From assembly GCA_963924565.1 (NCBI GenBank), contig OZ004608.1, positions 23,560,001 through 23,624,000 of the forward strand: a stretch of DNA of 64,000 nt, given 5' to 3'. Below the pieces are notes generated by a model. It saw only the letters and a list, made by a program, of their open reading frames with translations. It was not told where the DNA came from and did not search any database. The translations under genes were made by a program, and so were the position numbers. Of the stretch, positions 24,001 to 58,700 are shown in pieces (the stretch's first letter is position 1; each line of letters starts with the position of its first letter). The stretch comes from Ascidiella aspersa (Eukaryota).

Positions 24001-27000
24001 TGCTAGTTCTATTAGGTTCTGTGCAGTGCATGCCTACTTCATCACAATACAATATTTACACAACAATGGATTTGTTCATTCGTGTAATATAGGCCATTAA
24101 ACGGAAAAACACGTCCTAATCACGTCATCCATATTCCACGTGGCCTGAAAAGTTTAAAATGCCGATATACGCTCTAGATTGGTCTTACATTGAAGAGTAC
24201 TAGTAGACAAAAAAGATTAGTCCAAGTTATGTCATAAAGGAGGTATCAAAAAATTCATAGAGGCTGTCCTGATACCGCAGTTCCATAGCGTTTCGCGCGC
24301 ATTTGAAATCGCGTGGCAATCAGAAGTGAATGCGTCAACGAGTTGTTGCATTTTTCTAGCGTTAATCAGGCGATTTTAAACAGCCGCAATCTCCTAATAA
24401 TCGCCGTTTTTAGCGTCTAGAATACACGGAACGTGATTTTTTTCGGACTCCGGCCGTACCCGCCGGGGGTGTTCCCGCCACAGCCCCGTTCCACCTATAT
24501 GTGATTTAAGTTGTTAATCATGTGACATCTCCCTTTGAAAGCGAAAACTGGCCACACATGTCAGCTAAACTCTACAAGAACAAAACATGACGTAGTTTCA
24601 CTTTTAACTAGGTTAAATACAGTAAATAAAGTCATAAATTACAATTGCTTATATTCAATGTTAAAAGGTATAATCATAATACGGTTCCCGTCGACTCCTT
24701 TAACCGCTATTCAAAATTTCAGACTTTTAGTGCGCTATATTACTACCGATTTTTTTAATAGCCACTTTTTATAATTTATATTTTAATAAAAATAATACAG
24801 CCCACTGCGTTGAAAAGCACACATACAGTCGGTGCTGATCCGAAACCAAATTAATGTAGGAATCTCGTCTATGATTTTCGATCCATACTTTAGGAAAAAT
24901 ATGAAGTATAGGACATATCTACTTGTGTGCATGACTGTTTGTGATAAGATTGTTTTTTTTTGCAAAATTACAACAAAGTTCCGCGGCAAACTTAACAAAC
25001 CCGGATGCGACTTGTCCCGCGGCACAAGGTTTTAAGAAACATCGGCTTAAAAAAATGCCTAAAATTAATTGCAAAGAACACAAATGTATTGTTAAAGCAG
25101 TTTTACATACTCATTCATAGGGCATTTATCATTCATTAAAAAAGAATAACTAACTTAATAGTTCGATTTGCCACTCGTGTGCTATTTATACGGATATATC
25201 TCAGCAAAAATAAAGACAAAACAAGACCTTTTTTGTCCAGTTATAAGTACTAACCATTTTCAGTACAGTAGATTTTAATTGAAGAGGCAATCGTGAAGTA
25301 GCCGAGGTTACACTTGTAGTTGTAATGATTTCCGTAAGTTGTGAGTGAACCTTCTGAGTAGCCATTTACGTCTGCGTTCGGTGCCGGTCCGCAATCTTTT
25401 GGTTTGCATACTGTAGATTCCCCTGAGTAAGTACAGTTAGTAGTTAAAAATCACTGCCAAAAACAGCTAAAACATAATTGTAAAATTTACTTTATATATA
25501 CGTTAACACACGAATTGCAGTTAAAAGTGTTTTATAATATTCGAAACAAAAACACTTGTTCCTTCCGTCGTTATATAAGAAGTCACTTTTATATTAAAGA
25601 TTTTAAGTTTGTTCTCACTTGACCACAATTCGTATTCGGTACAAATAGCTCGTATTGGATCAATTTCGTCTGTTTTGTATCCAGTGTTGCAAGTAAAGTG
25701 GATAGCAGTCTCGTAAACATACGAGTATCTGTTTGTAAAATTATAGGTTAATCATTAAAAGGTCTAAAAATGTGCTTTATTTTTAGATAAAAGTTAATTA
25801 GGATAGATTTTAATCAAAGTATGTTATAACTCCAATATATTAAAACTTCGCTAAGTGAGACCTGGCATAAACCTTATGTCGGTTAAACAAAAACAAACAG
25901 GCCTTGTTTAAGAAAATCGGTTTAACTTAAAATTACCAATTCAATACTTTGGTCGATATTTTCTATCATACAAGTGAAGGAGTTCGTGCGTGGAACGAAA
26001 AAGTGGTGCTTTCTCGAAATCAATTTACGTAAAATAAACTTACTCGATAAACTGCGATACTGTCAGGTCAGTCAAATTTGTCACATCCGGAAATGACGCA
26101 ACGTGGAATGAAGCATGGTCGTTTAAAAGCGGTGCGTGGCACTTGATACGTATGCACTCCGGAAGTTGTGGAGACCAGGCACCTGTTTCGTCGCAATTAA
26201 CGTAGTCGGAGCCGTTAAGATAAAATCCAGGATCACATCTGTTAGATTTGTAAGACAGTAAAACACCATTATAAAATAAATTACGAGTTTCATTTTAAGC
26301 AGTAGACCGCTTTCAGAACAATTTTCTTCTATTTTACACGGAAAGCCATCGCGGACTAACTGAATCTGTGCATCAATAATGCAAGCGAGGCAGGCTAGAC
26401 AAACAACTAGCCTGTAGTGCGGTTCGAACTCACGACCTCCGGTATACCGCTACCGTGGCTATCAACTGCGCTACACAGGCTCAAAGGGGAGCGAGTGGAG
26501 AAGTAATCAAGATCCCAATCCTTGCTACATTTATTCAGTTTTGTATTGCATATATTCAATCTTCCTTACCAATGTAAAAAGTTTTATAAAAAACTTTTGA
26601 ACAAAGTATATTTTAAAACGCCACTGCTTTACATAAATTTATGGTATCTTTACAACGAACCTTCAAATGCTTCAAAATGCAATTGTTGATTCAAGATAGC
26701 GGTGCAGACGCAGAAAAACCAGCATCTTATTATACCAAATTAAAAAGGGGTCTCACGTATAGGTAGCCTCTCCTCCAAAGACCTCAGACGTGGTTTCCGA
26801 CGTGGCATGATTGACAGGCGGGGACGGGCCACAAGGAATGGGGTCACAGGAGGGGATAGGGGAACTCCAGGATCGGTCGGCTTCACAAGTCGCGGTGTTT
26901 TCTCCGTGCATCTCGAAACCCGGGTTACATCTGTCATTCCATATTTATAGTCATACATAAACGGAAATGTCTAATAGAAAACAAGTTTTAGCGGATGTTT

Positions 27001-39100: not shown

Positions 39101-40789
39101 ATCAATGTGCAGTTGAATCCGTCTCCTGCACAATTTCAAACAATAAGCTCGAAAAATTTAAAACAGGATAAGATTTGCAAAAGCATATTTTTGGTTGGAA
39201 TATGGATCAACAGAAACAATTAAGACAGGGTTTCTTAAACTTTATTTCCCGCGGACCCCTAGAATATTTTCTGCTTAGCGTGGACCACGGTAGGCAAGAA
39301 CTTTTCAAAAATGACGTCATAAATTGACATCACAATCAAAATGGACTTCAGAAATATGCTGATTTTATTTTTATAAATTTAGGTCACAATATAAACAGAA
39401 TTTTTAGAAATATGATGATGGTTTAGGTAAAATTCTGAATGATTCAGTGCTAAAACGTTTAATTTTTAATTAAACTCTTTTCTTTGAAAAATTGATTACT
39501 TAAAATACACTTAGGTTTCATTTTGGCCTTCGTGGACCCTCAAGAGGTCCATGGACCCCAGTTTAAGAACTCCTGACATCAGACGTTTAACTGCAAAAAC
39601 ATGCAAAATTGATCAGCATTGTTTAATTGGAATAAAAAATAGCTCTTGTGTGGCCGAAACACTAAGTAAGCGGTATGAAGCAGACTGTTTCTAAGTGTAA
39701 CAGACCTGTGTATCCCCAGTTGCAGTAGCACTCGTGGCTTCCCTCCGTGTTTATGCAGTAGGCGGTATGATGGCAGAGATGATCATTGACACACTCATCA
39801 ATATCCACACAAGTTGGAACAGGCGCTGACCATTTCTAAAAATATTGTAGTCGCTTTATGTTATAATATCTACAATACAAAGAGAAAGCGGTAATTACGC
39901 CTTATTTATCAACTGCAAAGCCCTTAAATTTTTTTAACAGTCTTAAACAGTAGTTCTTAACCGGGAGGTTGCGATCTCTCCTATACACATTCTTTTTTTT
40001 TCTTCTTGAGTTAACAGTCTTTTTCTTCTTGAGTTAACAGGCACAAATTTGATTATACGATGTATTGTGTGGATCGATACGTTTCAGAAATCGCAAGGTA
40101 TAACACGGTATATCCGATTATTATGTTTGTATTGTCATGATATCTAAAACCCTGTGTTATAGGGCTCTATGCTACATAAATAAAAAATTCTAAATAAACA
40201 AACAAACAAAACTTCGATAAAAGTGATCTTACATGTCAATAATAAGCATCTAAGGTAAACTGACGTTCCATACCTGATCAGCCTGGCATCTTATTGCGGT
40301 TGCCCCGTGCAGTTCATACCCAATATTGCACGAAAAGTGTACAGTGTCGTTGAATTGGCGGCTGGTTGAATCCGCAATAACCAGCGGAGGCTGCATAAAG
40401 TTTAAAGCAACATGAATACTTTACAACAAACATTATACATCAACGGGTTGCCAGTGTGTATAAAACAATAACAACAAATAAACGCTGACTTATTTCGAAG
40501 GCATTTTTAAAAGTGATTTAATTTTACGCGTTGCTGGGCTTTGCCAATCTCAAACGAAACTCAGCAATAGCGTTAAAATAGGAATTTAACTTACTGTACT
40601 AAAAGCTTTGCATCTCGTCCTGACACAAAAGAATTTCTGAGATGGCTGTTGCACTTCAGATCCTGCGTGCTTCCACAGACCTCTGTTTCCGCAGCGCAGC
40701 AACGTAGTCTTGGCTCGCCTGCTTCCAATCCCAACCCTCGTGTAAAGCTGAAAGCCATTCTGGCACGACACCCAACTCTTGTGCGCACC
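1..40789 (-). CDS. SVEP1: SVEP1-like CCP/Sushi array (2 CCP + cbEGF + about 56 tandem CCP modules; runs off the window)
   Basis: Recurrent C-x-x-P..(N/H)G..(Y/F)xC..GY...C...W...P.C modules joined by 4-residue linkers (e.g. CEPVSC), counted manually over 65 exons. Confidence 0.93.
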
Positions 40790-43700
40790 CTAACGGACAG
40801 ACGCATATTAAACAAATATATATTAAATTAAATTAGGTAAATCGTTTAAAACACAAAAAGGAAAACACTCACTTGGTGTGACATACCTAAGGATACAGAT
40901 GCAATAATTCATACATAAACGAATCATTTTTAAAAAAACATTTGTTCATCAATTTGACACAAAAAACTAAATACTTTTGTAAAAGAGTTTCTTACTAAAC
41001 GCCAATGTTGATTATTACAAAAAAAAATCAGCCTAATAATTCATAAAGAGGTATCTTTTAAATATAGATATACAATCAACCTATAACAGCGCAAACTGTT
41101 CACATCTGCAGGGAGGTTTGAATACCGGTCGCGTGGTTCAAACATTAAAATTTTAACTAAATTTAAGTACACAGACATTCTAACCCCAGATGTATAGAGT
41201 AACTAAGGTGAATAAAACCGTTTTGTTAAATATTTGACCTGCTTTTGAACTGACAAGTGATCAACTTCTTGGATAGGGTTACATGATTGACAGAAGGTTC
41301 GAGGACGAATGGTTACAATTTGACCTTTGATACCTCCAAGGGCGTCAGGCCAGGCCCTTACGTTGCCCTCATTGGACAGACAGTTGAAATAGAGGCTGAA
41401 GACTTGACGTTTGTCCATGACATAATCGTATACGTTAAACTGCGAAATTTCCCCTTTGAAATATAAAAGATTAATCTTTAGATTTTTCTATGGTTAACAT
41501 TGTTATTAAGTGTTAATGTGTTATTTTACTTTTCTAAACCATATATCGCAAACACTTAAATATAAAAAGAATAGTTTTTCGAGTCATTTTTAGTTAAACT
41601 AAATTAAACTTTTTATATTATCAATTTTTAACGCAAAAGTGAAAGTTTTCCTCTACCTATAAACTCCTGAGAGGAAGAGAAACAACCTCCGAGACAATCT
41701 TGCTCCTGTCCAATAACCATTATGCCTCCTCCTGGGATGACGCTTCCATTCTGAAGCCCAGTTCCGCTTGCCTCGAGATGCTGGTTTAGGAAAATTTGCC
41801 AGGATCCGTCCTCGCTTTTCCACGTTACAACCACGTGATACCACGTCCCGTCATTTAATTTCCTTGTGTCCGTCACCACGGATTCGCCATTAACGTACCT
41901 GGCCGAAAACGCGCTTGCCAGTTAAGTTTTTCAAGTGCCACTTTAGATACATTTAAAATTTAACACTTTTTTCAAATGATTGATATTAATGCATTTCTTT
42001 CTGCGGATTCATATAATAGCTTTCTGGACCCATATTGGTAATCTTGTTTGTTGTTTTAAGCTGGCCAAGAGCTTTCCAATGGGATGTTCGTAAATAGTTT
42101 GAAAGAACATCTCATAATGATTAACTAAAGAAAAAAGTTTTACTTTGAAATAATATTGAGCGATCTTTTAATGCTTTTCCGTTTTGATCATTGTTGCTGA
42201 AATAGGTAGTTAGATTTAATTCTATAAAATAAAATTACAGTGTTAAAGCCTCGAGGTTTGTAAGAGTGAAGACGTCGGCCAGTCGTTTCTTGCCAATCGC
42301 ATAGGAGAAAGGTGTCCCCTGACTTTCTGTATAGTTGGAGAACATGTAGAACGCAACAGTAATTTCGGTCATGTTGTTACCAAATCCATCTTTAAAGTGA
42401 ACGTGGTGGTAGGTATTGGGATTGCTGAACGAGAGATCGAAGTCCGGAAGCAGTTCTTACAAGAAAAACACATATCACTCACTAAAAGCGTTATAACTTG
42501 ATGTTTTTAGTACCATTTCAGATGTAGTACACCAAAAGCCATCGCAGACTCGCCGAATCTGTCGATCAAAAGCCATCGCAGACTCGCCGAATCTGTCGAT
42601 ATATTATACAAGCAGAGGATGCCAGAAAAACAACTGGCCTGCAGTGAGGTTCGAACTCACGCCCTCCGATCAAGCCGGGACCGTCGCTCTACCAACTGAG
42701 CTATGCAGGCTCAGAGAGGAGCGAGTCGAGAAACAACCATGCGCCAATACTTGCACATTCTGTTAGTACAGTGTTTCCCAAACTTTTTTTCTCGCGTACC
42801 ATTTTGAGCTTTTGTACAGTGTTCATGTACCACCTAAGTTACATCTGACTAGAATATCTCAAACTATACCTATTTTAGCATATAGATAAGAAAATGAGCA
42901 TGTAGCTGTATTAGAGTTTAACAACTATCATTCCAGGAAGACTTAAAAGCCATAAATTAAGCAAAACACAGCAAATAGTTGTAATGCGATGGATGTAGTT
43001 GTTTTTTTCGCGACCAGCTGGTTGAGATGTCGTCGGGAGTATGCTTGGTTTCATAGCTGAATTAGCAAGCGCCTTCATACAAACAACATATTGCGGAACA
43101 GCTTCTCTATTGTGTTCAATAGCGATAAACCCGTAGTTTATGTAGCTTAAGTCTGGCTGTACTTTCGTTTAGACATGTTCCTAGTATAGTTAAATTAAAC
43201 AAAATTAAATTCTCACACTATTCCTCTATTTTAAAAGAAATTACAGTAGTTCAATATGTACGAAATATCATTATACATATGGCAATACTACACTGCTGCT
43301 CTTCAGTTTATTACTACTTACATATTAAACCAGCCAAAAATTAACGATTTATTATCTTCAACAAGCTAAGTGTTACGTCATAAACGTACGAAACCTCAAA
43401 TTAAAGGTAATTAAAACGCAACATTGCAAATACCCAATCTGAAAGTTTTAAAAGTTGAAAGTTTTCGCAAGTTTATACATATATGCTTTAAAAAGTTTTC
43501 GCAGATTTATACGTAGTCGCGTACCACCTGAAAGACTCTCGCGTACCACAGTTTGGGAACCACTGTGTTAATACAAGCAACTTCACATTGGGGGATCATC
43601 AATCCGTATCAATCAATGAAAGACACACACACATATGTGTTTAATAACAACTGTGATCTAGCCCTTCGGAAGCTGCTTTATGACCAACGATTACGGCTTC

Positions 43701-46700
43701 CGTATCAATAGTACACCGAAAAACCATCGCAGACTCGCCGAATCTGTCGATCTATGATGCAAGCAAAGCAAGCAAAAAAAACAACTGGCCTGCAGTGAGG
43801 TTCGAACTCACGACCTCCGGTCAAGCATTTCAGGTGTATTGAGGTATTTATGAGTCAAACGCACTTTTCGAAATACACTCGATATGCTGACTGAATTTGG
43901 TGCTTGCAAGCATAGTTTCACGTTAAATATTACTCACTCGTCTCGCAGCTGGCTCCAGTGAACGTCGGGGCACAGGCACACCGGTGAGAATCGACGCCGT
44001 CGACACAGGAACCCCCGTTTGCACACGTCACACCAACACAGTCGTCGACATTAACCTCACACAGTTCGCCAACGAATCCGCTTTTACAGTGGCAACTAAA
44101 AGCAGTTCAGGTCATAAAGTTTTTGGATTTTTTTTTTGCACTAACTGTATATTTGTAACAATAAATGCAATCGCTTAATAACAAAACGATTTATCACTAA
44201 GGCAAAAGTTTTTTTGATAACACCAAACCAACCTATGAATAGCTGAGCAACTTTGTCTTTACTAAATGTAAAGAAGTAAAAATGCCCAAATGTATTTGTA
44301 TAAAAAATTACATTCCTTATGAGAAAAGTTTTAAATACATTGCGCGGTGTATTAACTTGTCGGACGGTCGAATTTGCAACAAAAAGCCTTGTCAAAATAA
44401 GACGTCTCGGTCACCCCTTGACGTTTTGCATTTCAAAAATTTCAGTAACGTGCAAATCGCCAGTGGTTTATTTCTTACATGGCTCCCTAAAATATTTATT
44501 TATTTTAATCTGTTTTACAAAATACCGTGCTGAAAATAACTTGCACTCACTCAAAAGCATTGGTATGGTCATGGCAAGTTCCTTGGTTGAGGCATGGCCG
44601 ACCTATGCAGTCGTCGATATCGATTTGGCAGTCGGTGCCGGTGAATCCAACCGCACACATACAAATGTAATGCGCCACCTTGTCTATGCAAGTTGCGCCA
44701 TTATCGCAAGGGGAAGTAGCGCATTCGTTGATGTTTATCTCGCAATTGGAACCTGGAAGAAATGAAATAAAACAAATGTCTTTATAATGCGCAAGTCTTG
44801 TCGGCAAAACTTTGCAGGCCACTATAGGTTGTGTTTATCAATGTATCTTCCCCCGAGACGTGTTCCGATTGGGAATGGATATAGTAACAGTCTTCCGAAA
44901 TGCTATAGCTTGTTCATTGCTCCAACGCCTCCAACAGCAAACTCCAAACACAAAATCAGTTTCTTGGTTCGTAAGCAACACTGTACACTAATTTACTGTG
45001 TTAAAAAAGTGGTAAGAATGCAGTATACAAAATACGAGTAGCAACGAAGTTGCTGTGCCCACCTACATTCTCGCTACATTACCCAGACATACCTGAGAAT
45101 CCGGCAGAGCAGTGGCATTGATATGTGGCCAACTTGTCTATGCACGTTGCGTTGTGTTGGCACGGCGTCGACTCGCACTCGTTTGTGTCGGTCTCACACT
45201 GAGTTCCCTCGTAACCAGTTTGACAGCGACACCTTAACGTGAAATAATTATACAGCCACTCAGTTTACAGGCATCAATGTCGTTATGAACTGTGATGTTG
45301 TCGCATAAAAGTGCTGCTGAGTTAAAGTCATAAGTGAAAGTCCAGATTTACGTCGAACTAACGGTCAAAATCACAAAGCAAAAATGAGTAATAGACTCAC
45401 GTGTATCCATTGATTTCATCTGTACAGCTTCCTGCATTGTAGCAGGGATTGCTCAAACATTCGTTGATGTCCGTCTCACAGTTAACTCCTGGTTGTGATA
45501 CAGTTTGTAAAATATATTATGTTAGAATAATAGAGTAAAACAAAAGCACAATCTTATGAAATGTCAAGTAAAAACAAAGTATAGTGGATTGCAGAAACAA
45601 GGGACTTACCTGTATACCCAGGAAGGCACACACAAACATGACCTGCGCTACCAGATTTACATCGCGCGCCGTTCTTGCAGGGATCTTTAAAAAATAAAAA
45701 AAAGTTATAATAGCGACCAATTTTGAGTTAACCATTACAAGGCATATTCATCTTACCGAGAAAACAGCTGCTAAACGGTAAAGTGCTGTTCACAACATGC
45801 AAGCCCAATATCTGCTCTTCTGAAGGTATACCACGTACGTGTAATTGAATGCCTAAAGCAGCAAAATAAAGTAATAATCAAATAAACTAAACATTGTATA
45901 CAAATAGCAAATCTTATTGTTAAATTAGAAAATTTTGATATTATTTCACAAACCAAACGCGAAGATATTCCATGACAGTGTTGTTGCAATATAAGCGACA
46001 AAACAATTAGACTGGTGTCTATAAAACATTTGTAAAGATTCCTCCCTTGGTTAAAGGACGTACCGTGTTGAGCTGTGTTTAGGCCGTTTTACTTCCCATA
46101 CTTGTAGGTGAGCGAGGAAAATCAGCGAACTTTAATGCGTCTCGTATACATTATATATTATATTGGTGATTTTAGGGCGTACACTACAGCCAGATGGTCA
46201 ACCTATGGCAAATTGCGCAAGGGGAGCGTTGTATAGGCCTACCCAAGAAATATTACAAGTAAAGTAGGCCTATACCTGATACCGATTTTCTAGTTCAATA
46301 GAAAATTATGCAATAGCTGAAGAATTAGTTGTACTGAGATTACTTCTAATCTATAAAAGAATAATCATTGTCATTGAATATATTCTTTGGTGTGCATCTG
46401 TTAGCCATGTTTCCTTTACAATAATACGTTATCGCTGTAATTATATACACTTTAGTATTCTTTATATACACTTCACTTTAAGACACAGTAACATTAAGTA
46501 AAAAATTGTGCTATTAGTCGCTGACTGGTTGGCCACCCTCGCGATGGGATAATCGCTTTCTCACAGAGAGACGAGCGGAAGCTATCCAAATCAATGTGAA
46601 CTCAAGTTTGCCAGCCGCTCACAGTCGGTAATGTAAAAGAGTAGCGAAACAACCGAAGCACTTTCAAGAGAAAAAGTTCTCCACCGTGTTCCTGATTTGG

Positions 46701-49700
46701 CAGATTAGCACCGAGTATGCTTTCCTGTGTTGCTGTCATAAAAAAGCCGGTTGGAGTTGGCCTGAGCTGGTAAAATGGAACCGAAATCAACGTATAAAGA
46801 AGAAGCACAGTGGATATATGTTTCCACTGGACAAACTCAAAAAGATAGTTTTTCAAATATAATGTGGTTGTTTATTGTGCTTTTTCATATGGCTTTGGCA
46901 GTGGACTGCTGTCTTCACGATGGTTGCGACTGTTCGAGCACAACTGTTATTTGCGAATCAGTGGGGCTAAGCTCATTGGTTGCAGTCAAATATCTCCCAA
47001 GCGACACCAACACGATGGTTATTACCGGCAACAGCATAGATGAGGTAAGATTTTTGGTTAAAACTATCGCCAAAATAACTTTCCTAACTTTTATTCAAAC
47101 AAAATAAGTTTATATTTATTTTTTATGTATAGTTGTTGTGTTTATTACATTTTCGTTTAATACAGAAAAAATGACACATTTTGGCTTATTGATATCCTGT
47201 GTTGACCTGTAGGCCTAGAAGTTTTACTTCCACGTAAAATTAAAACGAACGTTCATAAAATGTTATTGGTTGTCAGTATATCAAAAGATCTGCGATCTAC
47301 TTGCCAACCGGTTAAATAAATGCGAATTTATTGTATTTGTGCAGATTACAAAAAAATCCTTCTTCAACCTAACTCAGCTTCACACGATTTATTTACAAAA
47401 AAACAACATTGCGAAACTAAATATCGGAAGCTTTGAGAGTGCTCCAGTGCTGAAATTGCTTAATCTTAGCAGCAATAGAATGACAAGCATTGTTGATGGA
47501 ACCTTTAGAGGACTTGATCGACTCACTTTTTTGGATCTAACCAATAACGAAATTACAGGTTGGCCTTTTTTATAGCTAACATGTAGAAGAGAAGAGTTCG
47601 GGAATTCAAATTTACCTAAAGAACACTTTATATCATCGTACATAGACAGAGGTATTTTTTCTTTGCTTCATGGTATTCAGGTTACGGCCCAACCATAGGC
47701 TTAGTCAGGGCTAAAATAAAATAGTCGAGTATCTCTAATGTATAATGACCCGCAGAGATTGTGCGACCCATCAAGAAGTCGCACTGTGTTTTCTGATTAT
47801 TTCTAATATTTAATAATTTTTTACAGCTTTAGAAGAAAATGCGTTCAAGGGATTACTTTCTTTGAGTGAGCTATATTTGTCCGACAACGGCTTGGCCAAT
47901 ATTCCTAATGGGGTGTTTGCCTCACTGCACAACCTGAACCACCTCAAACTGAATGGAAATAAGATGGTCACATTACCTGACGGCGTGTTCAGTACACTCA
48001 ACAAACTAGCGGAGTTGTACCTCAGCTACAACAGGTGAGTAAGCGGTAATGTACTTTACGAGAGTATACAACGCAGCCCGTGACTATACGTTTACTCGTC
48101 AATGTGTAAGATGTGGATTTTGCAAATAAATGTAACGTAAATTGTTGCAAGTTGTAAAATGTTTACGAGACATAGTGTGTTACTATATGTTATTTCCGAA
48201 GTATGTTACCTTTTGCCTTGTAAATGTTGTTGAAAACAGAAGCGGGCGAGTGAGTCCATACCCCTATTTTTTGCCTAATATTAGCTTTTTAAAGGCTACG
48301 CTCGTTTACTGCGTGACATTCTTGTTAAGTTTTATCAACCTAATGTATATGTGGCATGTGTGTTTTGCGCTTCACGCATATGGGTTACCTAATTATTTTG
48401 TATAGCCACAATACATAGAATAAAGAGTAGGGCGGCCGACCCTATTCATAGGACTTTAATTACACTTGATCTATATTACCAAAAGCTAGTACCGTCAGCC
48501 CAAAAAATCAAATAATCGATTTTTTAGCAACGTTTTGCGGACATCTCTTTGAATGCCTTCAGACTCGATTTCAGTTCAACATTTGCGCACGAGTAATTAA
48601 ACAGAATTCTTAAGGTTATTTGTTTGTGATGCCAAATTATGACGTAAACGAGGTTTTTATCTCTCAACATTTTCAATCCTGAATCCAATCCTGGTTGTAA
48701 AACGTGTAATATGGAGTGAAGTCAGTTAAAGATAATTTTTAAGTCGAGGTAGATTTTAAAGTTTTTATATTTAAGCGATTCATTGCGAATATCATTACTA
48801 ATCCATGACATATAAATATTAAGCGTGTATCGCATACCGCTTTGACTCGATAACCTAATATCTGGCGTCATCCGAGCAACAAAACCTATTTTAGATAGAT
48901 TACGGCGTGACAAAATTTAGCGAGTAAGCAGCCCAGGAGATGACTTTCAATTGTACAGCTTCCCTAAGTATTGGAATTTTCTTGTTACAGACTGCACACA
49001 ATAACTTCCGCCCAGTTTGAGGGCCTGGGCAAACTAGAGCGGCTCGACATGCAAGGAAACCGCTTGCTAGAGCTCGATCCAGCGGCTACCGAGGGAGAAA
49101 ACCTAAATCGCAGGGCATGCCTTCAGGTACCGGTATAGGTTGCATTTTTTTGTTATGAACACAGATAAACGAAAGTTAGTTTTATTGCACATTATACTTT
49201 CATACAGTATAACATAAAACCCATGGTCTCCCAACATAAACCAGTGAACCGCTGAAGTGTAATTCTAGATTGTACCGTAATTCATGAGGCTGTTTTTTCG
49301 TGTCTTTACACTACGTGCCTATATCCCGGTTTCATTTAAGTTATTGCATAATTTTTTAGGTTTCTAGAAATATTTCTCATGACGAGAAATTAAGAAATTC
49401 AGGCGTTTGAAAAAAAAATAAGAGAAGGTGTCCTATTGAGTATGAATAAAATTATGTGACACAGAAGATTGGTATTAAGCGTATCTAAACTGACAAAAAA
49501 AGAGTTACAGTTGTCATATTATCACGAAAAATAAACCCGAGTTTAGAATATCAAAAGTTGATTGATTTTTTCTTATTTATTGAAGACGAGCGATTTGCCA
49601 CAAAGTCAATTCCACCAGCCAGGTCTTCTTTCTGGATTAAAGCAGCTTAAACATTTGGATATTTCCAATAATTCACTGACGACGATGAGCGCATTATCTT

Positions 49701-52700
49701 TCATATCTCTAAGAAAACTAACCTTGCTCAAAGTATCGGCTAACCACTGGAGGTATTAAAAGTTGCCTGGACAGCTATATAACTAAACTATTTGTTATCT
49801 GCCCTTTTCGTGAGGTTCACTTTAAAAAAAACGTTAAATACTTGTTTTTGCATCTGTATGCTCTTTAAAAGACTTTAGCTTTCGTGCTATATTTTACAAA
49901 ATAGTAATACTATATGAAGCTACCTGCCATAACGTATGGAGTACTTCAATAATATTGCACCATTGCTCTAAAGGTGCGATTGCAAGCTCAAACGAACTTT
50001 ATTCCACATGCGACAAGAACATGACGACGATGTCCCCAGACACCATCACGTGATATGTTGGCTCCCGGTGAAGTTGCGAGGTGTTTCAATCGACGATCTC
50101 AAGTTTGTAGATTTAGAGGACTTCGCCAACACAACTCGTCGTAAAAAAATTTCACATTCAAGCGTATTAACAAACCAGCCCACGACTTTATCAACGGTGA
50201 GTAAAACTGAAGTTTATCGCTAAGCTCTGGTTTCCTTGTTGCACTACTTGAATGCAATGTAACCCTTTATGCAACGTCAACGTCGTTTGGTGCAGGCTGA
50301 AATCCAGACAAAGAAAACCTTTTCCAGCGACCTTTCCACAACCTTCAACGTTTTGCTAGGCACGTCTGGACAGCGCTTATCGCCGAACAAGCCGCCAGCG
50401 TGGAGCCGCCAGCCAGTCTCATTTCCTACCTTCAATTTACGTCAAAACGCTGCAACTGCAACGTCACACGACAGGGTCGACGCAACGGCTGATGGGAATC
50501 GATTTAGGAAATTGGTAAACAAAAGCTGGGTACTTCAGTAAGTATTTCCAAATTATAAACACAATTATGCGGATTGGGTAGCATATTGATGCATAGCGAT
50601 ATTAGTATCTTGTAGTCCAAAAAAAAAACAAAGCTTTGAGAACGTAACAATAACATGCTTTGAAAATCGATGTAAAACAAGAAAGTGCAGTTGGTAAACG
50701 TCCAAGACCAGTGGTTGGTCATTTAAGGTATTTTCGGGGACCGTAAAACTTGCATACACAAGACCAATTCAAAATATACTAAAAATAAATTTCCCACATG
50801 AATTGCTTAGGTATCTTAAAAACAGGCCAAAATTGAAGCAATTTAAAAACAAGGCTATAGAGCAGTGGTTCTCAACCTTTTTAGCTTACGGACCGGTAAA
50901 TTTGAAAACAAGTTTTGGTGGACCTTCAAAAATCACAATCAACGCAAAAATGTAATTACGACAAAACTATATGCAACTTAAAAGCAATGAACGGAAACGT
51001 CAATTTAATAAGCAATTTGCTACTGTCTTTTTGATATCACACGTGTTTTACGTGGTTCATAGAAGTTTTTGGTTTCAAAGCTTAAGACTTAAACGAGTTG
51101 TAGCCTACTATAAACACTTGCACCATTGTGACGAACAATAAAGTCCAAAGTAAAACATTAACTCTATGTTGCGTCACAATGCAGGAAATTACGGAACTGG
51201 CAAAGTTCTACATTTGATCGAACCGGCGGTTGAGAACCACTGCTATAGAGCAGTGGTCCCCAAGTGGGGTCATCTGACATTTTTGTGGGGTCGCCATAAA
51301 CTCATCATATTTCCGTTTTAGTACGATTTATGTATTTCGTTTTCTTTACAATGACGTCACACTAATAAACGTGACTGAGTGTACCTTCTACATAAATTGC
51401 TGCTATAGCTCTAAAGAGCTGCTAAATCACCTAACGTGACATTTAGCAACAATTAGCTTTGATTTAGCGCAGCGAGTATGGCACTTTTGCTCGCAATTTG
51501 TTTCACTATGACATTCTTTTAATGAGATATAAAGGGATGGTTTTTCAAAAATGGTTCGTGAAGCGGGATTTCAGCGCAATGAGGTTATTAAAAGCGAACG
51601 TGTGCATATAAAGGGTTGGTTGGTCAAAATGTTAACTTTTTGTTATTTAACTTGGGAACGTAGTTTGCAGATATAAGGAGTTCGCTTTATATTCCTAATT
51701 ATGACAGCGGATGCAGCAAACCGTATTTATTTTAACTCGTCTAAAGCCACACAATCAAAAGTTTCAGTAAATATTTTCGTAATGACTTCGATGCAATCAA
51801 CTTACCCGACTCTATTCAATTTTGTTATTAAAACCCCATCCCGTTTTTAAACACATGATTTATGAATCTGGACAAAGAGCAATGAGCATATTAATCACTA
51901 AACATCGTAGGCCAATATTGCTTGGAAGTAGAGCATGAAATGCGGTTATGCTTATATAAAGTGGATGCCAAAACTAGTGGAAATACTATGCAACCGCAAC
52001 CATAGCACTGAATGCAATTTATTGTTGAAACAAAGTGAATTTTTTATGTTCGTTCGTGTGTTAAATCAAATTAATTTTGTTGTGAACAATTTGCGCTCGT
52101 GCTGCTTTATTCAAGCATTATCTGGATTTTTTTTATTCGTGTCTCAAAACTAAATGGGGTCGCGATGTGAATTATTAATTGCATTTTATTTAAATTGGGG
52201 TCGCTTATTAAATAGGTTGGAGACCACTGCTATAGAGCACTGGGATTTCACTTGCTATTTGTTAAGAATATTTGACTAAAGCTTTTTTTGCAGATGACTT
52301 GACTGTGTATTATGGGTCATTTAAAATATTTTTTTTACAATACTGGATTATTTGTTCTTTGAAAAATTCTACTTACTTAGTTTTAACCATGAATCTTATT
52401 TCGCGTTTTTTAAGTGTCTTTAAGTCTATCAAAAGTGCTGTTTTAGCCATACAGGTATTCGGTCGTTTGTGTAGCGAAACGGGTGTTGTATCAATATGTA
52501 TAGCTCTAACAACTTTTGTGATTTGGTAAAATCATATGAAAGGCATGACATTATATAGAAAAATGTGTGAACGTATGTTGTGTGCTTAATGCATATTTTT
52601 GCGCTTCGCGCGAGCTTTAGGTAAAAATTTAGCACGACTTTATTAGACAACAAGAGCTTTCCTAAGGGTTTTTGCTTAAAGACATGTTATAAGGTAACCT

Positions 52701-55700
52701 TGTGATGTCATCTTTGAAAATTACGTGGCCAACTTTTGTTCTTGACGTCGATATAGTAACGATTACAACGTTTTCGGATTTTAAAAAAGCAGTAAATAGA
52801 TTTCATTTTGCACAAGCAATTTTAGAAAGACAAGTAAACAAGTCTATTCCTCTCGGCGTCTTTACTGTCTGAAATTATAAGATAAACGCCAAAGATCGTA
52901 AGGCTGTAGGCCCATGTTTCACGTCTTAAACTAAGCAATGAAAAAATCCACATGTTTGAAAAACACCTATATTCGAATTAAAATATGTCCAGCTTAGGCC
53001 TATACTATTGATTTGCTCATGTTATTCGTTAAGGTTCAACAAAAGAAACAACAACCTATTTGACTACTCAGACACTGAAGGTTTGTGTGAAAAATAAGCT
53101 AAATTTCTCTATTTAAATAATATCTACATTTTTTTATATTACCGTTTTATTCATAAACCGTCCTTATGGTGTCCATATGACTGTTTTGTTGCTATATTTG
53201 CAAGTTTAACACTTAACGAACTGGCAATGTTTTACTGATATATTTACAATTGTAAATTACATTTATATATGTACAATAGTAAAAAAATTAAAATTAAAAA
53301 TGGCGTTAGTCAAGCAATGACAGTTCAATTGCTGGTCATACACAATTACACAACCAAAATTGTTAGGAACATTAAATGTATGTCAAGCTAAAAATATATA
53401 GGTATATCATTAGATTTGGAGCCATAGCGAAACGCAACCCATTTTTTTTAGACTTATTTCGAAAACAAGTCAATCTTTTAAATGAAACTAGTGTTATTTT
53501 TTTTAAGTCAGGTAAAGTTAATGCAAGTTTAATTAAAACCCCTTTGTCATTATGGCAGCACTGGAAGTCCAAATGCAAAAGCATATGTACCTTTCGCAAC
53601 CTACGCGACTTACGCGTGCTTTTAACTGTCCCGCTTCAGATAAGAAATATCATTTAACTGCAAGACATTGACAATATCTAAGTTTAGATATATTTTAGTT
53701 TTCATGATTGCTTAATAGATTTTCCACCGTATGAAGAAAACAAGCCAGCACTGCAGCAAAATGAGTTAATATCATGGCTCATGTTGGTGGCAGCCATTTT
53801 CACCGTGTTTGCCGTAGTGGTTTGTGGAGTGGCATTTAAAAGGAAACACGACCAAGAAGGCGGAAGCTTATGCGGGTAACCTGGAATACTGTATATGATT
53901 TTTACTACTTATCTTATTAGCGTAAAAAGCTGAAGATTGTAAAACCGTTTTTAAATATCATATAAAATATATCACCTTGTACAGAGGTTAATATAATATG
54001 GTCTTGGAAATTACAAGTTTTACCAAGGGAAACGTTACGTAAGATTTACACCATTATTAAGCAATTTCTATTTGCTCATATTAGCAATGGGCGACTTATC
54101 GCTTACAAATTGGCAATTATGTTTTTTTGGATAGTACTAAATAGAAAATACTATAAAAAAGTTTACGTAGCAATATTTGTATAATCTAGCGTCAGAGTCC
54201 CTACTGCTCAAATGACATTAGCATAACCAGTGACTTTACACTTGGTAATCGTTACTTATAGCAAAGCAAAACAAAACATATGTAACGTAAAGCTAACAGT
54301 TTTAATAACCACGGTTTATTTATATAGATGTTGTTTTGGATCGGACAAGACATCAGGGCCATACCCATCAGACTCTGTAAGGTAATACCATGCAATTCAA
54401 GTAAACAAATCTCGTAAAATATTCTGTCGTAAATCATCGATGCTTAAAGGATAACTTTACATGATAGATCCTTCAGCAATTATCCTCTATTATATGACAA
54501 TCCACTTGCCCGAAGACCGCTTCCCCGACAGCCAGCAGTCACACGCCGTGATCACCGCAACCAAAGTCTAAGTGCGATGAGTGCCTTGCAAAATGGCATC
54601 GATGTAAGATGGACATGCGGTGGCTCGTTCGGCATCGGTGACTCGCGCCCACGATCGGTAATTCCTGGACGCTTTATATCCCGACTCGGGGCGGTGTGTA
54701 CTCCTCCCATTATTCCGCCACGAGATCCACTGGATTCAAGCTTGGAAGACGAGGACACAGGTAGCTCAAATAGCGACCGAACGCGGGCTTCGACACGTCG
54801 TGAGGAGTTGCACAGGCATCTACACCTCATGTCCAATAACGGCGCGAGCGCTGCGAGTTTATCGGACATTAGCACTTTATCACCGCCCTTACACAGCTAT
54901 TCGAACAGACGATCGTTGCAGATTCATGTGATTGAAAAAGAGAAGCGATTGAAACGGGAGGGTCCACGGTCGTCATCTGAGAAAAGTTGCAGGCGTCAGC
55001 CAGGTTGCGTTTCCAATTCGGTAAGCCGTAACGGAAGTGACGTGTCAAGGAAGAGCAGGCACTTGTCGAAGAGAAGTACAAAGCGCGATCACGACATGGC
55101 GCTGGAGGTCTTAGATGAAGGCAAAACGGCTCGTCACAACAAGAGGGACAACTACTCAAAAGTGCATTGCAACAGACGGTCAAGGGCACCAAAAACAGCG
55201 AGCATTGGTTCCAAAATGCTGTTGGAAATACCGCCAGAGAACAAATATCGCACATATTTAGATGACAATTGCCTTCTTGGATCTGTGGCGCCGCGTAAGA
55301 AAGTTCGACGGGGTGCATCTGCGCGCTACTGCGGAGAGAAGCCGGTCGATTACTTTTACCAACAATCCAACAACCGAAAAGTGAACGCCAAGTCCAACAA
55401 ATATTCGCCCGATTGTAAAATAACCGAAGTTTCTTCTGTGCGTCGCTCACAGAGTATGAATCATAACAAAAGAATGGATGAGGTTGATTTCAAGTTTCCA
55501 CCACCGCCACCTTTACTGAACATAAGCAGTGAAGCAGGTAGCCAAGCAGAGAGTTTATCACTATCGGAAAAGTCGTACAACTTGAATTTGCCGTCTCCGC
55601 TGCCATGTGGAGATGGCGAGTTCGATACACCAACTTTAATTTACAGAGATAGCTCATCAAGTCTTTCCTCTAATGATGTGCGAAACTACTCGATTCTGGC

Positions 55701-58700
55701 GCTTTGCTCAAGCGGACACAAGGATGACGCCAACTTGACAAGTAAATCCACCCACAAATCGGAACGCAAGTTCAGGTCTGCTTTACACTGTCGATTGGAT
55801 TCTGTTGATTCGATGCACGCATCACGCGACACAAATTGTGAGTCCCTTTCCGAGGATTCCAGTGCTGACTTCGACAACAACAAAATACAAGCGTTTGATG
55901 AAGTGGTGTACCGTGACCCGAAACCCTCGCTTGACGTACCGCGTTATAAACACGACCATAGAAAGTCGATGCCAATCTTTGATGAGGTTATGAGATACGC
56001 ACAACCGTCATATAAGAGTAGCTTAGCGGCAAGTGAGATTACTTGCATGGGATCGGACAGCTTTATTAACAAATCTGTCTCGCGTTACCCCAAATACCAT
56101 CAACTGCTTGAAAATCGAAGTCATCGTCTTGATCTTTCTCTCACTGATTCGGAATGGGAAACTACAGTAGCTGGAAGTCGAAAAATTCTGCCTACCAGAA
56201 GCCAACATGGAAGGTCAACCTCTGGGTCATCTGATAACAAACAGTTACCGGAGGCAACACAAGAGACGGAATCTAACTCATATAAAACAAAATTGCAGCG
56301 ACGTCAGTTTAGCGGACTTTTCACAAAACAAAGTTGGGGTTCTCAAAGCAAATCGGAGTCTAGTCAAGGTTCGCAGAGTGTTTCTTCCATTGAGTTTGAA
56401 ACCCGGAAATTGGACGAAGACGGAGATCGGGCTAACACATACCAAGCGCTTCACCAAATGTATTCAGGCGAAATGTTACAAAGCACTAAACCCGCGGATT
56501 CACGGGAAAACAAAAGCAGATTAAGGGCGCCACCCCCGAGGCTTCTCATAAACACTGGTAAATCTACCACTGTTGACGTCGCCGGGTCGTCAACTGATGA
56601 TGTTTCGACAGACATTGAAATGCTTGATTTAGGACCTGCCTAGGTTTTATTATTTCATTTGCTTTTAAACTTGGAGGAAATATCACATTTCTTGATTATT
56701 ATTGTAATATGTTTCACTATTGCTGCTCGTTTTACGAGTAACACAGTTTTAAAGAATAGTAACTGTTTTGTTTGGCTTTTGGGTATATTTTGATGCTAAA
56801 AAAGACGATTTTAAACAAAACTACTAACCGCTGCAGTTTTGGTAGCTTGTGGACCCTTTGCCATCTGTATGGGTTGTTGCTGGACATTTATAGCACGATT
56901 GTTGCCCCGTCTTAAACTGATATGTGTTTAGAGGACAAGGGTAGCAAGGCTCTATGCCAGTCCAGGAGGCTTGACCAGCAGTACAAAGAGCTATAACACA
57001 ACACATAAAAATGTTTAAAAAATCAGCAAGTTAAAAAAGGGTGTAGCATATTTAACTATAAGAAGGCTAGACTAGAGATGCGATCGATCTATCTTTAAAA
57101 TAAGGATGTCTGTAAAAAGAGATTTCCATAGCAAAACGATAAAAAAAAAAATTAAAAAAAAAATTAGATAATATAAAATGACTTGCATTTACAGTTTCCC
57201 TTTGTTAAGAATTAGACAAAATAATTCTCAAAAATACAAACAATAATTTTATAAGATGCCTTGAACATAAGGATAAATCTAAGAATTAAGGACAATATGG
57301 AAGCTGATCTTATTGACTTGTTTGTATCTGTAGACAACCGACCCGAACCTATAGCACTTAATTTAAAACTGTCCCAAAAGCCACTTGATTCATTTGCCAA
57401 CATCGATATTAGCCTAATTAATTAAACAACTCGAACTTAAATCGGTGCATAAATAACGAATATATTGCTTCATAACAAATGGACCCTTCGATGGGTCATT
57501 AAAAAACATTTTTTGTGAGAATGCCTGTTGAGATATTTTTTCCAGTCAGCCAAAAAGTTTGGCCTACTTACGACCGCATTCCTGGTATGAACTGGTTCCA
57601 GTGGCTGTTGTTCCAGTTTCTGGGGGGCACAAAGTACATTCCACTTCACCAAATACGTCACTATAGGTGTGTACTGGACAGGCGATGCAAGTCTCAAGTC
57701 CGTTGTGTGAGTGTGTACCAGGCGCACACAGATCTAAAAAAATAATGTCATTAACTCTGCATGGAAATATAAGAAATAATGGAATTTAACTATGTGCTCA
57801 AAATGTTTTACTGTTAAATTTTTTTTTTTGGATATGTAGCCTATTTTCGAAATGAAACTAAATCGCGCTGTTGGCAACAAAATGTTATCATCCTAAAGTC
57901 TAAGGGCTTACAAAAATACCGACTCACCTTTGCATTCTGCCCTGGATCGTGCATGAATGCCAGGCGTGGAAGTGTCGTCGGGACAAGCCTTACAGGATAA
58001 TTGCGCTTCAACATCCTGATAATACCCTTCAGCACAACTTACACATTCCGCCGTTGTGACGTCATAGAAAGTGCCGATTGGACAATTTACTGTAATGGAA
58101 TAAAACAAAGCGTTGTTTCCTTGAGTAGCCTACTGCAATTCAGTACTATGCCTATTAGTACCAGATTTTTATCGTCGTTAAAGTTAAAATTTTGTAGATG
58201 TACGTAGAAAATTTGGCGCTAGTCTAGAATCCTACCTCAGCGTTGAAACGATATTAAAGCAACGCACATTACTTGGGTGTTGGTGGGTTAAGTATTATTA
58301 TATTTATTATTTAATAATATTGCTTAACCTACCCAAACCTAAACGCTAACCCAAATAATATTTGTTTTGGTAGGATTCTAAACCAGCGCCGAGAATTGTC
58401 AACCATGTTTATTTTTTGCAAAGTTTAACCAACTAAGTAAATGAATTTTTGCTGGTTAATCGTGCATGAATTTTTGCTGGTTAATCGAATCTTAATTATT
58501 TTTATATTGTATCCGAGATAATTTTTCTAAAAAAATCGTTATGGCCCAAAGGCGTCGTGCGTCTCATAGCACCCTCGATTTCAAAGTTTTGGCAACTTAT
58601 ACAAGATATTACATTTTTTTCACTTTGCGCGAACCGATAACATCTATGTTACGTAGCTTTTGTATATAAAGTACCTAACATATTTTCAACCAAAAACGTT

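What the first reader, a model, noticed from the sequence alone, without database searches (positions are those of the whole stretch)
46775..56643. Complete orphan LRR transmembrane receptor gene nested antisense in an intron of the SVEP1-like matrix gene
Seen: host intron 45853-56828 (about 11 kb, the largest in the window) contains an 11-exon plus-strand gene that splices into an unbroken ORF of about 1,274 aa. The ORF track splits it into unrelated pieces, including an apparently orphan 688-aa ORF. Its architecture (signal peptide, LRRNT, 10 typical LRRs, LRRCT, stalk, TM, tail of about 760 aa with no recognisable TIR or kinase) matches no family I can name. Known: vertebrate SVEP1 acts as a ligand for cell-surface receptors (integrin alpha9beta1, PEAR1). 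Inference: a secreted multidomain ligand and a surface receptor sharing one locus could be a co-regulated or mutually exclusive pair, although nesting alone does not prove a functional link.
Basis: partly seen in the sequence, partly recalled or inferred. Interest (0 to 1): 0.85.

Follow-up and report, generated by a model that had tools for sequence, protein, structure and literature searches.

The report
Nested tunicate LRR membrane-protein gene
A real, intact gene for a leucine-rich-repeat surface protein with a long disordered tail lies backwards inside an intron of a sea-squirt SVEP1-like matrix gene; it is not an orphan, because Ciona and Clavelina carry the same uncharacterised gene, and nothing yet ties its function to its host.

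Summary
The plus strand at 46775-56643 splices through GT-AG introns into one open frame. I find 10 coding exons and 1,294 aa (1,276 aa without a 54-nt microexon). The layout is signal peptide, LRRNT, 10 LRRs, LRRCT, stalk, TM and a tail of about 760 aa.

The gene fills 90% of the minus-strand host intron 45853-56828. That intron lies between the Ephrin_rec_like exons and the EGF exons of a sushi-rich SVEP1-like gene.

"Orphan" is wrong. An exhaustive HMMER search with the tail exon found collinear full-length orthologues in Ciona intestinalis (LOC100176386) and Clavelina lepadiformis (LOC143460540). Both are annotated "uncharacterized". It also found a third tunicate in metagenome contigs. 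In that species the same three host exons lie antisense just beyond the tail exon, so at least that side of the nesting is old.

The tail has no Pfam domain and is predicted to be disordered, but it carries about 12 conserved short motifs, including an FPPPP motif and proline-rich SH3-type motifs. The ectodomain resembles many LRR families and belongs clearly to none.

The ligand-receptor pairing idea remains untested. LRRTM genes nested in alpha-catenin genes are a known precedent. The scan also flagged this same tail separately (s1-794463).

The parts
46775..47044 (+). Exon 1: start codon (alternative in-frame ATG at 46862), signal peptide, four-Cys LRRNT cap, LRR1
   Evidence: Sequence and splice donor GAG|gtaaga. 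Weak LRRNT match in Pfam. Cys pattern C46-x4-C51-x-C53-x6-C60. tblastn of Ciona P0003 begins at 46925.
47345..47558 (+). Exon 2: LRR2-4
   Evidence: Pfam LRR_8 E 1e-17. Acceptor tgcag|ATT, donor CAG|gttggc. Matches P0003 residues 71-163.
47827..48034 (+). Exon 3: LRR5-7
   Evidence: Pfam LRR_8 E 1.3e-23. 43% identical to P0002 137-205 and P0003 163-232, ending at the exon edges.
48991..49126 (+). Exon 4: LRR8 and first half of the inserted loop
   Evidence: Pfam LRR_8 E 1.6e-4. Matches P0003 234-262 and L014 989-1111.
49586..49752 (+). Exon 5: rest of the loop, LRR9-10
   Evidence: Pfam LRR_8 E 8.9e-10. 47% identical to P0003 296-333. 49% identical to L014 1586-1714.
49974..50196 (+). Exon 6: LRRCT cap (W-R-C-D-C ... 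C-W) and start of the stalk
   Evidence: Matches P0002 305-347 and P0003 333-408 and L014 4145-4357. No close paralogue in the own genome.
50296..50537 (+). Exon 7: Ser/Thr/Pro-rich stalk. The 3' end is uncertain (50514, 50529 or 50537).
   Evidence: Open frame and splice signals only. The stalk is not conserved in the orthologues.
53699..53875 (+). Exon 8: membrane-proximal segment and transmembrane helix (alternative acceptor at 53688)
   Evidence: Hydrophobic window at aa 508-535. Matches P0002 553-597 and L014 6579-6710.
54328..54381 (+). Exon 9: 54-nt frame-neutral microexon coding the juxtamembrane Cys-Cys ... S-D-S-V-R segment
   Evidence: Splice signals. The equivalent residues are present in the Ciona and Clavelina proteins. 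A matching open segment lies at L014 8409-8567.
54450..56643 (+). Exon 10: cytoplasmic tail of 730 aa plus stop codon. It contains the 688-aa ORF that the ORF track shows alone.
   Evidence: Open for 731 codons. GC 45% against 32-39% in the flanks. Single copy in the genome. HMMER hits to tunicate tails at E 1.5e-42 to 1.7e-29. 642 of 730 residues have pLDDT below 50.
54475..54534 (+). Conserved juxtamembrane motif ([20 protein letters not shown]), holding a Y-x-N and an R-x-x-P-x-x-P
   Evidence: Identical in the window, Ciona and Clavelina. Partly present in fragment P0005.
54604..54729 (+). Conserved R-W-T-x-G-G-x-F-G-x-G block and P-x-x-P-P-R-D-P block
   Evidence: W, T, G, G, F, G, G are invariant in all five sequences of alignment A1. 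Coordinates.
55483..55512 (+). Conserved acidic F-x-F-P-P-P-P-P motif (form of an EVH1 ligand)
   Evidence: Present in all four full tails. The partner is inferred, not tested.
55075..55146 (+). Predicted helix 1 of the tail (tail residues 209-232, A-L-E-V-L ... A-R)
   Evidence: AlphaFold2 block pLDDT 75-80. E, L, E invariant in A1, P0005 included.
56437..56472 (+). Conserved T-Y-Q-A-L-H-x-M-Y-S-G block, within predicted helix 2 (tail residues 660-671)
56587..56640 (+). Conserved acidic C-terminal motif ([13 protein letters not shown])
   Evidence: Nearly identical in all four tails.
45853..56828 (-). Host intron of the SVEP1-like gene. The nested CDS span takes up 9,869 of its 10,976 bases.
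   Evidence: Minus-strand donor GTTAGT starts at 56828 and the acceptor AG ends at 45853.
56829..57030 (-). Host exon: third Ephrin_rec_like module. It ends 185 bases beyond the nested gene's stop codon.
   Evidence: Pfam PF07699 E 2.8e-13. 56% identical to L014 12820-13008 on the minus strand.
57567..58129 (-). Host exons: first and second Ephrin_rec_like modules (57911-58129 and 57567-57785)
   Evidence: Pfam PF07699 E 1e-14 and 1.3e-12. 70% and 63% identical to their positional counterparts in L014.
43933..45727 (-). Host EGF exons on the other side of the intron. Further on come EGF_CA (39665-39835) and dozens of Sushi modules down to position 142.
   Evidence: Pfam EGF E 1e-8 to 1e-11 and Sushi E 1e-16 to 1e-22. 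Cys-rich minus-strand segments.

Best explanation
This is an intact single-copy protein-coding gene. It is the orthologue of Ciona intestinalis LOC100176386 and Clavelina lepadiformis LOC143460540. It sits on the opposite strand inside the intron that separates the Ephrin_rec_like exons from the EGF exons of a SVEP1-like gene.

Shown: it encodes a type I membrane protein with a capped ten-repeat LRR horseshoe, a poorly conserved Ser/Thr/Pro stalk, one transmembrane helix, a juxtamembrane cysteine cluster, and a tail of about 760 residues. The tail has no globular domain, but about 30% of its residues lie in about a dozen short blocks conserved across distant tunicates.

Inferred: it works as a cell-surface adhesion or recognition receptor. 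The LRR module binds an extracellular partner. The disordered tail acts as a docking scaffold. Its conserved proline motifs (R-x-x-P-x-x-P, P-x-x-P-x-R, acidic F-P-P-P-P) would recruit SH3 and EVH1 (Ena/VASP-type) proteins and so couple contact to the actin cortex, as the Robo tail does. The cysteine cluster is a likely palmitoylation site.

The nesting is an old piece of synteny held in place by the intron. It is not evidence of a functional pair.
For: Gene integrity:
- 1,294 codons with no stop and all introns GT-AG.
- GC rises over the tail exon.
- Single copy in the genome.

Orthology:
- An exhaustive phmmer search of 1.84 billion representatives with the tail gave four related hits, two annotated as tunicate and two unnamed metagenome proteins, plus one hit I judge spurious.
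- Sources and names are given.
- Ciona and Clavelina proteins map collinearly onto exons 1-6, 8 and 10.
- The microexon residues are present in both.

Domains:
- LRR_8 and LRRNT are the only Pfam families.
- The Clavelina ectodomain aligns cap to cap with FLRT2; its LRRTM2 alignment (residues 25-310) stops short of the LRRCT.

Tail:
- No Pfam family.
- 642 of 730 residues have pLDDT below 50, with two short helices.
- 81 columns are identical in four species and 216 residues lie in conserved blocks.

Nesting:
- L013-L015 carry the gene with the three Ephrin_rec_like host exons antisense just downstream, in the same order, at 56-70% identity.

Precedent:
- LRRTM1-3 lie on opposite strands of a conserved alpha-catenin intron (PMC3933685).
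Against: - There is no transcript evidence for this genome.
- The start codon and the exon 7/8 junction are therefore unresolved.
- The motif-to-partner assignments are pattern recognition from general knowledge and were not tested.
- The AlphaFold model used only five sequences, so a small folded module could have been missed.
- The window's own spliced ectodomain was never searched or folded as one piece.
- Only the 3' side of the nesting was seen in the other species, and its taxon is unknown.
Confidence: 0.65

Rival explanations
1. Host and guest form a functional unit. Either the LRR protein is a receptor for the SVEP1-like matrix protein, or antisense nesting couples their transcription, for example by interference or mutually exclusive expression. 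A guest 3' UTR that runs into the host's Ephrin_rec_like exon could help this.
For: The guest fills 90% of the intron, and its stop codon lies 185 bases from a host coding exon with no canonical AATAAA in between. The same tail-to-host-exon apposition is kept in a second tunicate whose tail is only 32% identical. From general knowledge, vertebrate SVEP1 is a ligand for surface receptors.
Against: A gene inside an intron cannot easily leave, so conserved nesting is expected without any functional link. LRRTM/alpha-catenin shows this (PMC3933685). No expression, co-expression or binding data could be obtained here. Only one flank was seen, and in one other species. No complex prediction was run because there is no specific reason to expect binding.
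Confidence: 0.1
2. It is a fast-evolving tunicate member of a named vertebrate or insect LRR-TM family (LRRTM, FLRT, Slitrk, LRRC15, or Toll-like without TIR) whose tail has diverged beyond recognition.
For: The ectodomain has the size and layout of LRRTM2 and FLRT2 (LRRNT, ten LRRs, LRRCT). It aligns from LRRNT through most of the LRRs with LRRTM2 and cap to cap with FLRT2. Single exons give their best PDB scores to an LRRTM-derived chain, IGFALS and LRRC15.
Against: The similarity is the generic typical-LRR consensus. Slit, chaoptin, Toll, LGR and SHOC2 score alike. There is no FN3, Ig or TIR. The tail has no match outside tunicates. A dedicated study found no lrrtm gene in Ciona or lancelet (PMC3933685).
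Confidence: 0.12
3. The model is an artefact. Either two separate genes (a secreted LRR protein and an unrelated tail ORF) are wrongly joined, or the gene is decaying.
For: There is no RNA evidence for this genome. The stalk exon and its junction rest on splice signals alone. The stalk is about half as long as in Ciona and Clavelina.
Against: Independent public models in two species join the same parts in the same order. There is no stop in 1,294 codons. The TM exon, microexon and tail are conserved in L014 in the same order.
Confidence: 0.04

Closest known systems
Ciona intestinalis LOC100176386 (XP_002122405.3 and isoforms) and Clavelina lepadiformis LOC143460540 (XP_076814213.1), both 'uncharacterized protein'
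   Same: Same architecture from signal peptide to C-terminal motif. They map collinearly onto the window's exons. The tails are 33-36% identical and share about 12 motif blocks.
   Different: Their stalks are about twice as long. Their inserted LRR loop has two cysteines where the window has one. Their genomic context could not be read here.
Vertebrate LRRTM1-3 nested in alpha-catenin genes CTNNA2/1/3 (PMC3933685)
   Same: An LRRNT, ten-LRR, LRRCT, TM protein gene lying on the opposite strand of a large conserved intron of a bigger gene. The ectodomain aligns with LRRTM2 from the LRRNT through most of the LRRs.
   Different: From general knowledge, LRRTM tails are about 70 residues and end in a PDZ ligand, and the genes have one or two coding exons. 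Here the tail is about 760 residues, there are ten coding exons, the host is different, and no lrrtm was found in tunicates.
FLRT1-3
   Same: Ten-LRR capped ectodomain. The Clavelina orthologue residues 24-347 align to FLRT2 3-321.
   Different: FLRTs have an FN3 domain and a short tail. No FN3 is detected here.
Roundabout (Robo) cytoplasmic tail (general knowledge, not tested)
   Same: A long disordered tail whose function lies in short conserved motifs, including a proline motif that recruits Ena/VASP, and SH3 ligands.
   Different: Robo has an Ig/FN3 ectodomain and no sequence relation to this tail. The likeness concerns how it may work, not membership.
Toll-like receptors
   Same: LRR ectodomain, single TM, and exon-level LRR similarity.
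   Different: No TIR domain in the window or the orthologues. The horseshoe is much shorter.

Membership tests
Tunicate LOC100176386/LOC143460540 orthologue group | Homologous cytoplasmic tail with the shared motif blocks | tested here: met
   phmmer E 1.7e-29 to 1.5e-42. Alignment A1. Conserved blocks listed.
Tunicate LOC100176386/LOC143460540 orthologue group | Collinear SP, LRRNT, 10 LRR with inserted loop, LRRCT, stalk, TM, Cys cluster, tail | tested here: met
   tblastn of P0002 and P0003 hits exons 1-6, 8 and 10 in order. LRR count.
Tunicate LOC100176386/LOC143460540 orthologue group | Single-copy, reciprocal relationship | tested here: inconclusive
   Single copy in the own genome. The reverse search in the Ciona and Clavelina genomes was not possible with these tools.
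LRRTM | LRRNT, ten LRRs, LRRCT, TM | tested here: met
LRRTM | Short conserved tail with C-terminal PDZ ligand, and specific sequence grouping with LRRTMs | tested here: not met
   The tail is about 760 aa and ends in D-L-G-P-A. LRRTM2 scores below IGFALS, LRRC15, LRIG1 and LGR4/5. No lrrtm in tunicates according to PMC3933685.
FLRT | FN3 domain between the LRR module and the TM | tested here: not met
   No fn3 hit in the window exons or in P0002/P0003.
Toll-like receptor | Cytoplasmic TIR domain | tested here: not met
   No TIR in Pfam. The tail is predicted disordered.
Different-strand nested gene | The whole CDS lies inside one intron of a host gene on the other strand | tested here: met
   Host splice signals at 45853 and 56828. 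Host exons on both sides. The transcript ends are not known.
Different-strand nested gene | Nesting conserved in other species | tested here: inconclusive
   In L013-L015 the host's three Ephrin_rec_like exons lie antisense just past the tail exon. The other flank lies outside the fetched DNA. Ciona and Clavelina could not be read.
SVEP1-like (host gene) | Ephrin_rec_like x3, EGF array and a long Sushi array on one strand | tested here: met
   Pfam on minus-strand exons. Exon series. VWA, HYR and pentraxin modules were not looked for.

The most novel reading that the evidence does not exclude
The antisense nesting may be a conserved regulatory module. The guest almost fills the intron, and its 3' end abuts a host coding exon and probably overlaps it. 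Transcription of the LRR receptor and of the SVEP1-like matrix gene would then interfere with each other. That would make cells either secrete the matrix ligand or display the receptor. The LRR ectodomain might even bind the host protein.
Probability: 0.07. Interest if true: 0.6.

Novelty: new member of a known kind. Interest (0 to 1): 0.3.

Why it matters
It gives a clean gene model and a motif map for a conserved, unnamed tunicate surface protein. ORF-based views break this protein into pieces. It also shows that the LRR-gene-in-an-intron arrangement known from vertebrate LRRTM/alpha-catenin arose separately in tunicates, with a different host gene. The conserved short motifs in an otherwise disordered 760-residue tail are directly testable docking sites. 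None of this overturns current understanding. LRR single-pass proteins with lineage-specific tails and nested genes are both common.

Tried and rejected
- **Genomic context:** The genomic context of the Ciona and Clavelina orthologues could not be read.
- **Tail word search:** The search for homologous proteins with the tail exon found nothing. It even missed P0001, which HMMER later found at E 1.5e-42, so that blank is a candidate-selection failure and not evidence.
- **ESM Atlas:** no usable hit for the Ciona tail.
- **Ectodomain searches:** these gave only promiscuous LRR similarity and no family assignment.
- **Spliced model:** Exons were joined only inside local scripts, to check the frame and to count repeats.
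- **Folding the ectodomain:** it was not folded. The only referenced full-length proteins exceed the 1,200-residue limit.
- **P0004:** this cockroach mariner-type repeat protein (E 3e-14 summed over four repeats) was rejected as a relative. Its score is spread over four repeat copies, so the per-repeat similarity looks weak.
- **Possible eleventh exon:** the open frames in intron 7 (about 50700-51140) were rejected as extra exons because the stretch is an interspersed repeat with over 1,000 candidate copies.

Full report
**What is in the sequence**

The plus strand between 46775 and 56643 holds a chain of open segments bounded by GT and AG signals. I read ten coding exons:

| Exon | Coordinates | Content |
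|---|---|---|
| 1 | 46775-47044 | start, signal peptide, LRRNT, LRR1 |
| 2 | 47345-47558 | LRR2-4 |
| 3 | 47827-48034 | LRR5-7 |
| 4 | 48991-49126 | LRR8, first half of loop |
| 5 | 49586-49752 | rest of loop, LRR9-10 |
| 6 | 49974-50196 | LRRCT, start of stalk |
| 7 | 50296-50537 | stalk |
| 8 | 53699-53875 | transmembrane helix |
| 9 | 54328-54381 | microexon |
| 10 | 54450-56643 | cytoplasmic tail |

- A local frame check gives 3,885 nt, that is 1,294 codons with no internal stop.
- Leaving out the 54-nt exon 9 keeps the frame and gives 1,276 codons.
- The 688-aa ORF that the ORF list shows alone (54577-56643) is the ATG-bounded part of the 731-codon last exon.
- GC content rises to 45% over that exon, against 32-39% around it.
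I found no eleventh exon.
- The tempting open frames in the 3.2-kb intron 7 belong to an interspersed repeat with more than 1,000 candidate copies in this genome.

Two details stay open without RNA data:
- The start codon. ATG 46775 has a 29-residue hydrophilic leader. ATG 46862 sits directly before the hydrophobic signal core.
- The exon 7/8 junction. Either 50537>53699, or 50514/50529>53688. The two solutions differ by a few residues.

**Architecture**

- Pfam finds LRR_8 in exons 2, 3 and 5 (E 1e-17, 1.3e-23, 8.9e-10), a weak LRRNT in exon 1, and nothing in the stalk, TM or tail exons.
- In the local translation the LRRNT has the usual four-cysteine pattern.
- Seven LRRs follow each other at exactly 24-residue spacing. 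With the first repeat and two more after a 27-residue insertion there are ten.
- The LRRCT begins with the usual W-x-C-x-C.
- There are two hydrophobic stretches, the signal core and a TM at residues 508-535. The TM is followed by a Cys-Gly-Cys-Cys cluster.

**The host gene**

- On the minus strand, three Ephrin_rec_like exons (57911-58129, 57567-57785, 56829-57030) lie on one side of the gene.
- On the other side come EGF exons (45557-45727 and onward), an EGF_CA exon, and dozens of Sushi modules. This is a SVEP1-like layout.
- The nested CDS span covers 9,869 of the intron's 10,976 bases.
- The nested gene's stop codon is 185 bases from the host exon, with no canonical polyadenylation hexamer in between. 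An antisense overlap of its 3' UTR with host coding sequence is therefore likely, but unproven.

**Not an orphan**

- A word-indexed search with the tail exon gave nothing. That was a failure of candidate selection.
- An exhaustive phmmer pass over 1.84 billion representatives found five proteins:
  - P0001, a 728-aa tail-only ORF from metagenomes (E 1.5e-42);
  - P0002, 1,419 aa (E 3.5e-30);
  - P0003, 1,341 aa (E 1.7e-29);
  - P0005, a 213-aa metagenome fragment (E 5e-4);
  - P0004, a repetitive cockroach mariner-like protein that I regard as spurious.
- The cluster look-up names P0002 as Clavelina lepadiformis XP_076814213.1 / CAK8675858.1, "uncharacterized protein LOC143460540".
- It names P0003 as Ciona intestinalis XP_002122405.3, "uncharacterized protein LOC100176386 isoform X2", with isoforms X1 and X3.
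- Both have only LRR families in Pfam.
- By tblastn they map onto the window in order: exons 1-6, the TM exon and the tail.
- The microexon residues (C-C ... S-E-S-I-R) are present in both, so the 1,294-aa form is the one supported by orthologues.
- Ciona isoform X3 differs from X1 by a 29-residue segment exactly where the window has its exon 1/2 junction. This suggests a shared intron position.
- The gene is single copy here. The nearest LRR paralogues share only about 40% identity over one exon.
- The two named hits are tunicates.

**The tail**

- Alignment A1 shows 81 columns identical in the four full tails. It shows 216 residues in conserved blocks separated by unalignable Ser/Arg-rich sequence.
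- The blocks are, in order:
  - the juxtamembrane [20 protein letters not shown], identical in three species;
  - R-W-T-x-G-G-x-F-G-x-G;
  - P-x-x-P-P-R-D-P;
  - an A-L-E-V-L...A-R helix;
  - L-G-S-V-A-P-R-K;
  - an acidic F-x-F-P-P-P-P-P;
  - Y-S-x-L-A-L-C-S-S-G;
  - D-S-x-D-S-M...N-C-E-S-L-S;
  - R-L-D-L-S-L-x-D-S-E;
  - T-Y-Q-A-L-H-x-M-Y-S-G;
  - the C-terminal [13 protein letters not shown].
- AlphaFold2 on A1 gives mean pLDDT 41.9, with 642 of 730 residues below 50. Only two short helices are predicted, and both fall in or next to conserved blocks.
- With five sequences this is a shallow model. It does agree with Pfam (no domain) and with the ESM Atlas (no usable neighbour).
- I read the tail as a disordered scaffold of short linear motifs.
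- From general knowledge, R-x-x-P-x-x-P and P-x-x-P-x-R are SH3 ligand forms. Acidic F-P-P-P-P is the Ena/VASP EVH1 ligand form. Y-x-N is a Grb2-type SH2 site if phosphorylated. A Cys cluster just after a TM is a usual palmitoylation site.
- These assignments are inference. None was tested.
- The scan's other note on this same stretch (s1-794463) reached a similar reading from the sequence alone.

**The ectodomain**

- Single exons and the full Clavelina and Ciona proteins hit many LRR families at similar strength: IGFALS, LRRC15, an LRRTM-derived chain, LRIG1, LGR4/5, SHOC2, TLR3, Slit, chaoptin and Toll.
- A collinear cap-to-cap alignment exists with FLRT2; the LRRTM2 alignment runs from the LRRNT through most of the LRRs but stops short of the LRRCT. 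These have the same ten-repeat size.
- There is no FN3, no Ig and no TIR. A dedicated study found no lrrtm gene in Ciona or lancelet (PMC3933685).
- I therefore do not file the protein under any named family. It has the general build of an LRR-TM adhesion or recognition protein.

**Is the nesting conserved?**

Their tails are 32% identical to the window's.
- In L014 the plus strand carries counterparts of exons 4, 5, 6 and 8, the microexon and the tail, in order.
- On the minus strand, starting about 570 bases past the stop codon, lie three Ephrin_rec_like exons. Each matches its positional counterpart in the window best (56%, 63% and 70% identity).
- So the apposition of the guest's 3' end to the host's Ephrin_rec_like exons is shared by two tunicates whose tails are only 32% identical.
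- The other flank (guest exons 1-3 and the host EGF exons) lies beyond the 10 kb that could be fetched.
- Nesting is thus probably old, but only one side of it is shown.

**The pairing idea**

- Conserved antisense nesting is what one expects once a gene sits in an intron.
- It is documented for LRRTM1-3 in CTNNA2/1/3 across jawed vertebrates (PMC3933685).
I have no binding evidence either.
- I did not run a complex prediction, because nothing specific points to binding.
- I put the functional-unit reading at about 0.1.

**Verdict**

- The "orphan" label is wrong.
- "No named family" is fair.
- The ligand-receptor suggestion is unsupported, but it is not excluded.
- The finding is a new, uncharacterised member of a familiar class, in a familiar kind of genomic arrangement.

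Exons were searched separately by reference, and full-length analyses used the database orthologues.

Noticed in passing
window 50855-51000 (also 9008-9343): An interspersed repeat of about 145 bp lies inside intron 7 of the nested gene. It has over 1,000 candidate copies in the genome at 83-89% identity, and it produces a misleading open frame ([11 protein letters not shown]).
   Followed up: partly
window 43700-43827 (similar at about 26126-26449 and 7746-7934): A 127-bp element has over 1,800 candidate copies at 97% identity. Elsewhere in the genome it often stands in tandem arrays with a 348-bp period (for example G000:C1:37350699-37353609). It is a young SINE-like or satellite-like repeat sitting in host-gene introns.
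   Followed up: partly
window 56644-57030: There is no canonical AATAAA between the nested gene's stop codon (56641-56643) and the host's Ephrin_rec_like exon, which ends at 56829 on the other strand. The guest's 3' UTR probably overlaps host coding sequence in antisense.
   Followed up: no
window 54604-54729 versus P0004: The tail block R-W-T-x-G-G ... P-P-R-D-P-L-D loosely resembles the C-terminal motif of mariner-type transposases. A cockroach protein made of four such repeats scored E 3e-14. I judge this a chance likeness inflated by repetition.
   Followed up: partly
P0011/P0003 versus P0010 (Ciona isoforms), residues 67-95: Ciona isoforms X1 and X2 carry 29 extra residues exactly at the position of the window's exon 1/2 junction. 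Isoform X3, which lacks them, matches the window's splice form. The extra segment looks like a retained or alternative piece of intron in the public models.
   Followed up: partly
The word-indexed protein search missed a 728-aa relative that exhaustive HMMER scored at E 1.5e-42. For Ser/Arg/Pro-rich queries a blank from that tool carries no weight.
   Followed up: yes
PMC12816324: In Ciona robusta haemocyte single-cell data, a Svep1-like gene (KY21.Chr14.130) is used as the marker of refractile amoebocytes. It is not known whether this is the orthologue of the host gene here. If it is, that atlas could test co-expression with LOC100176386.
   Followed up: no
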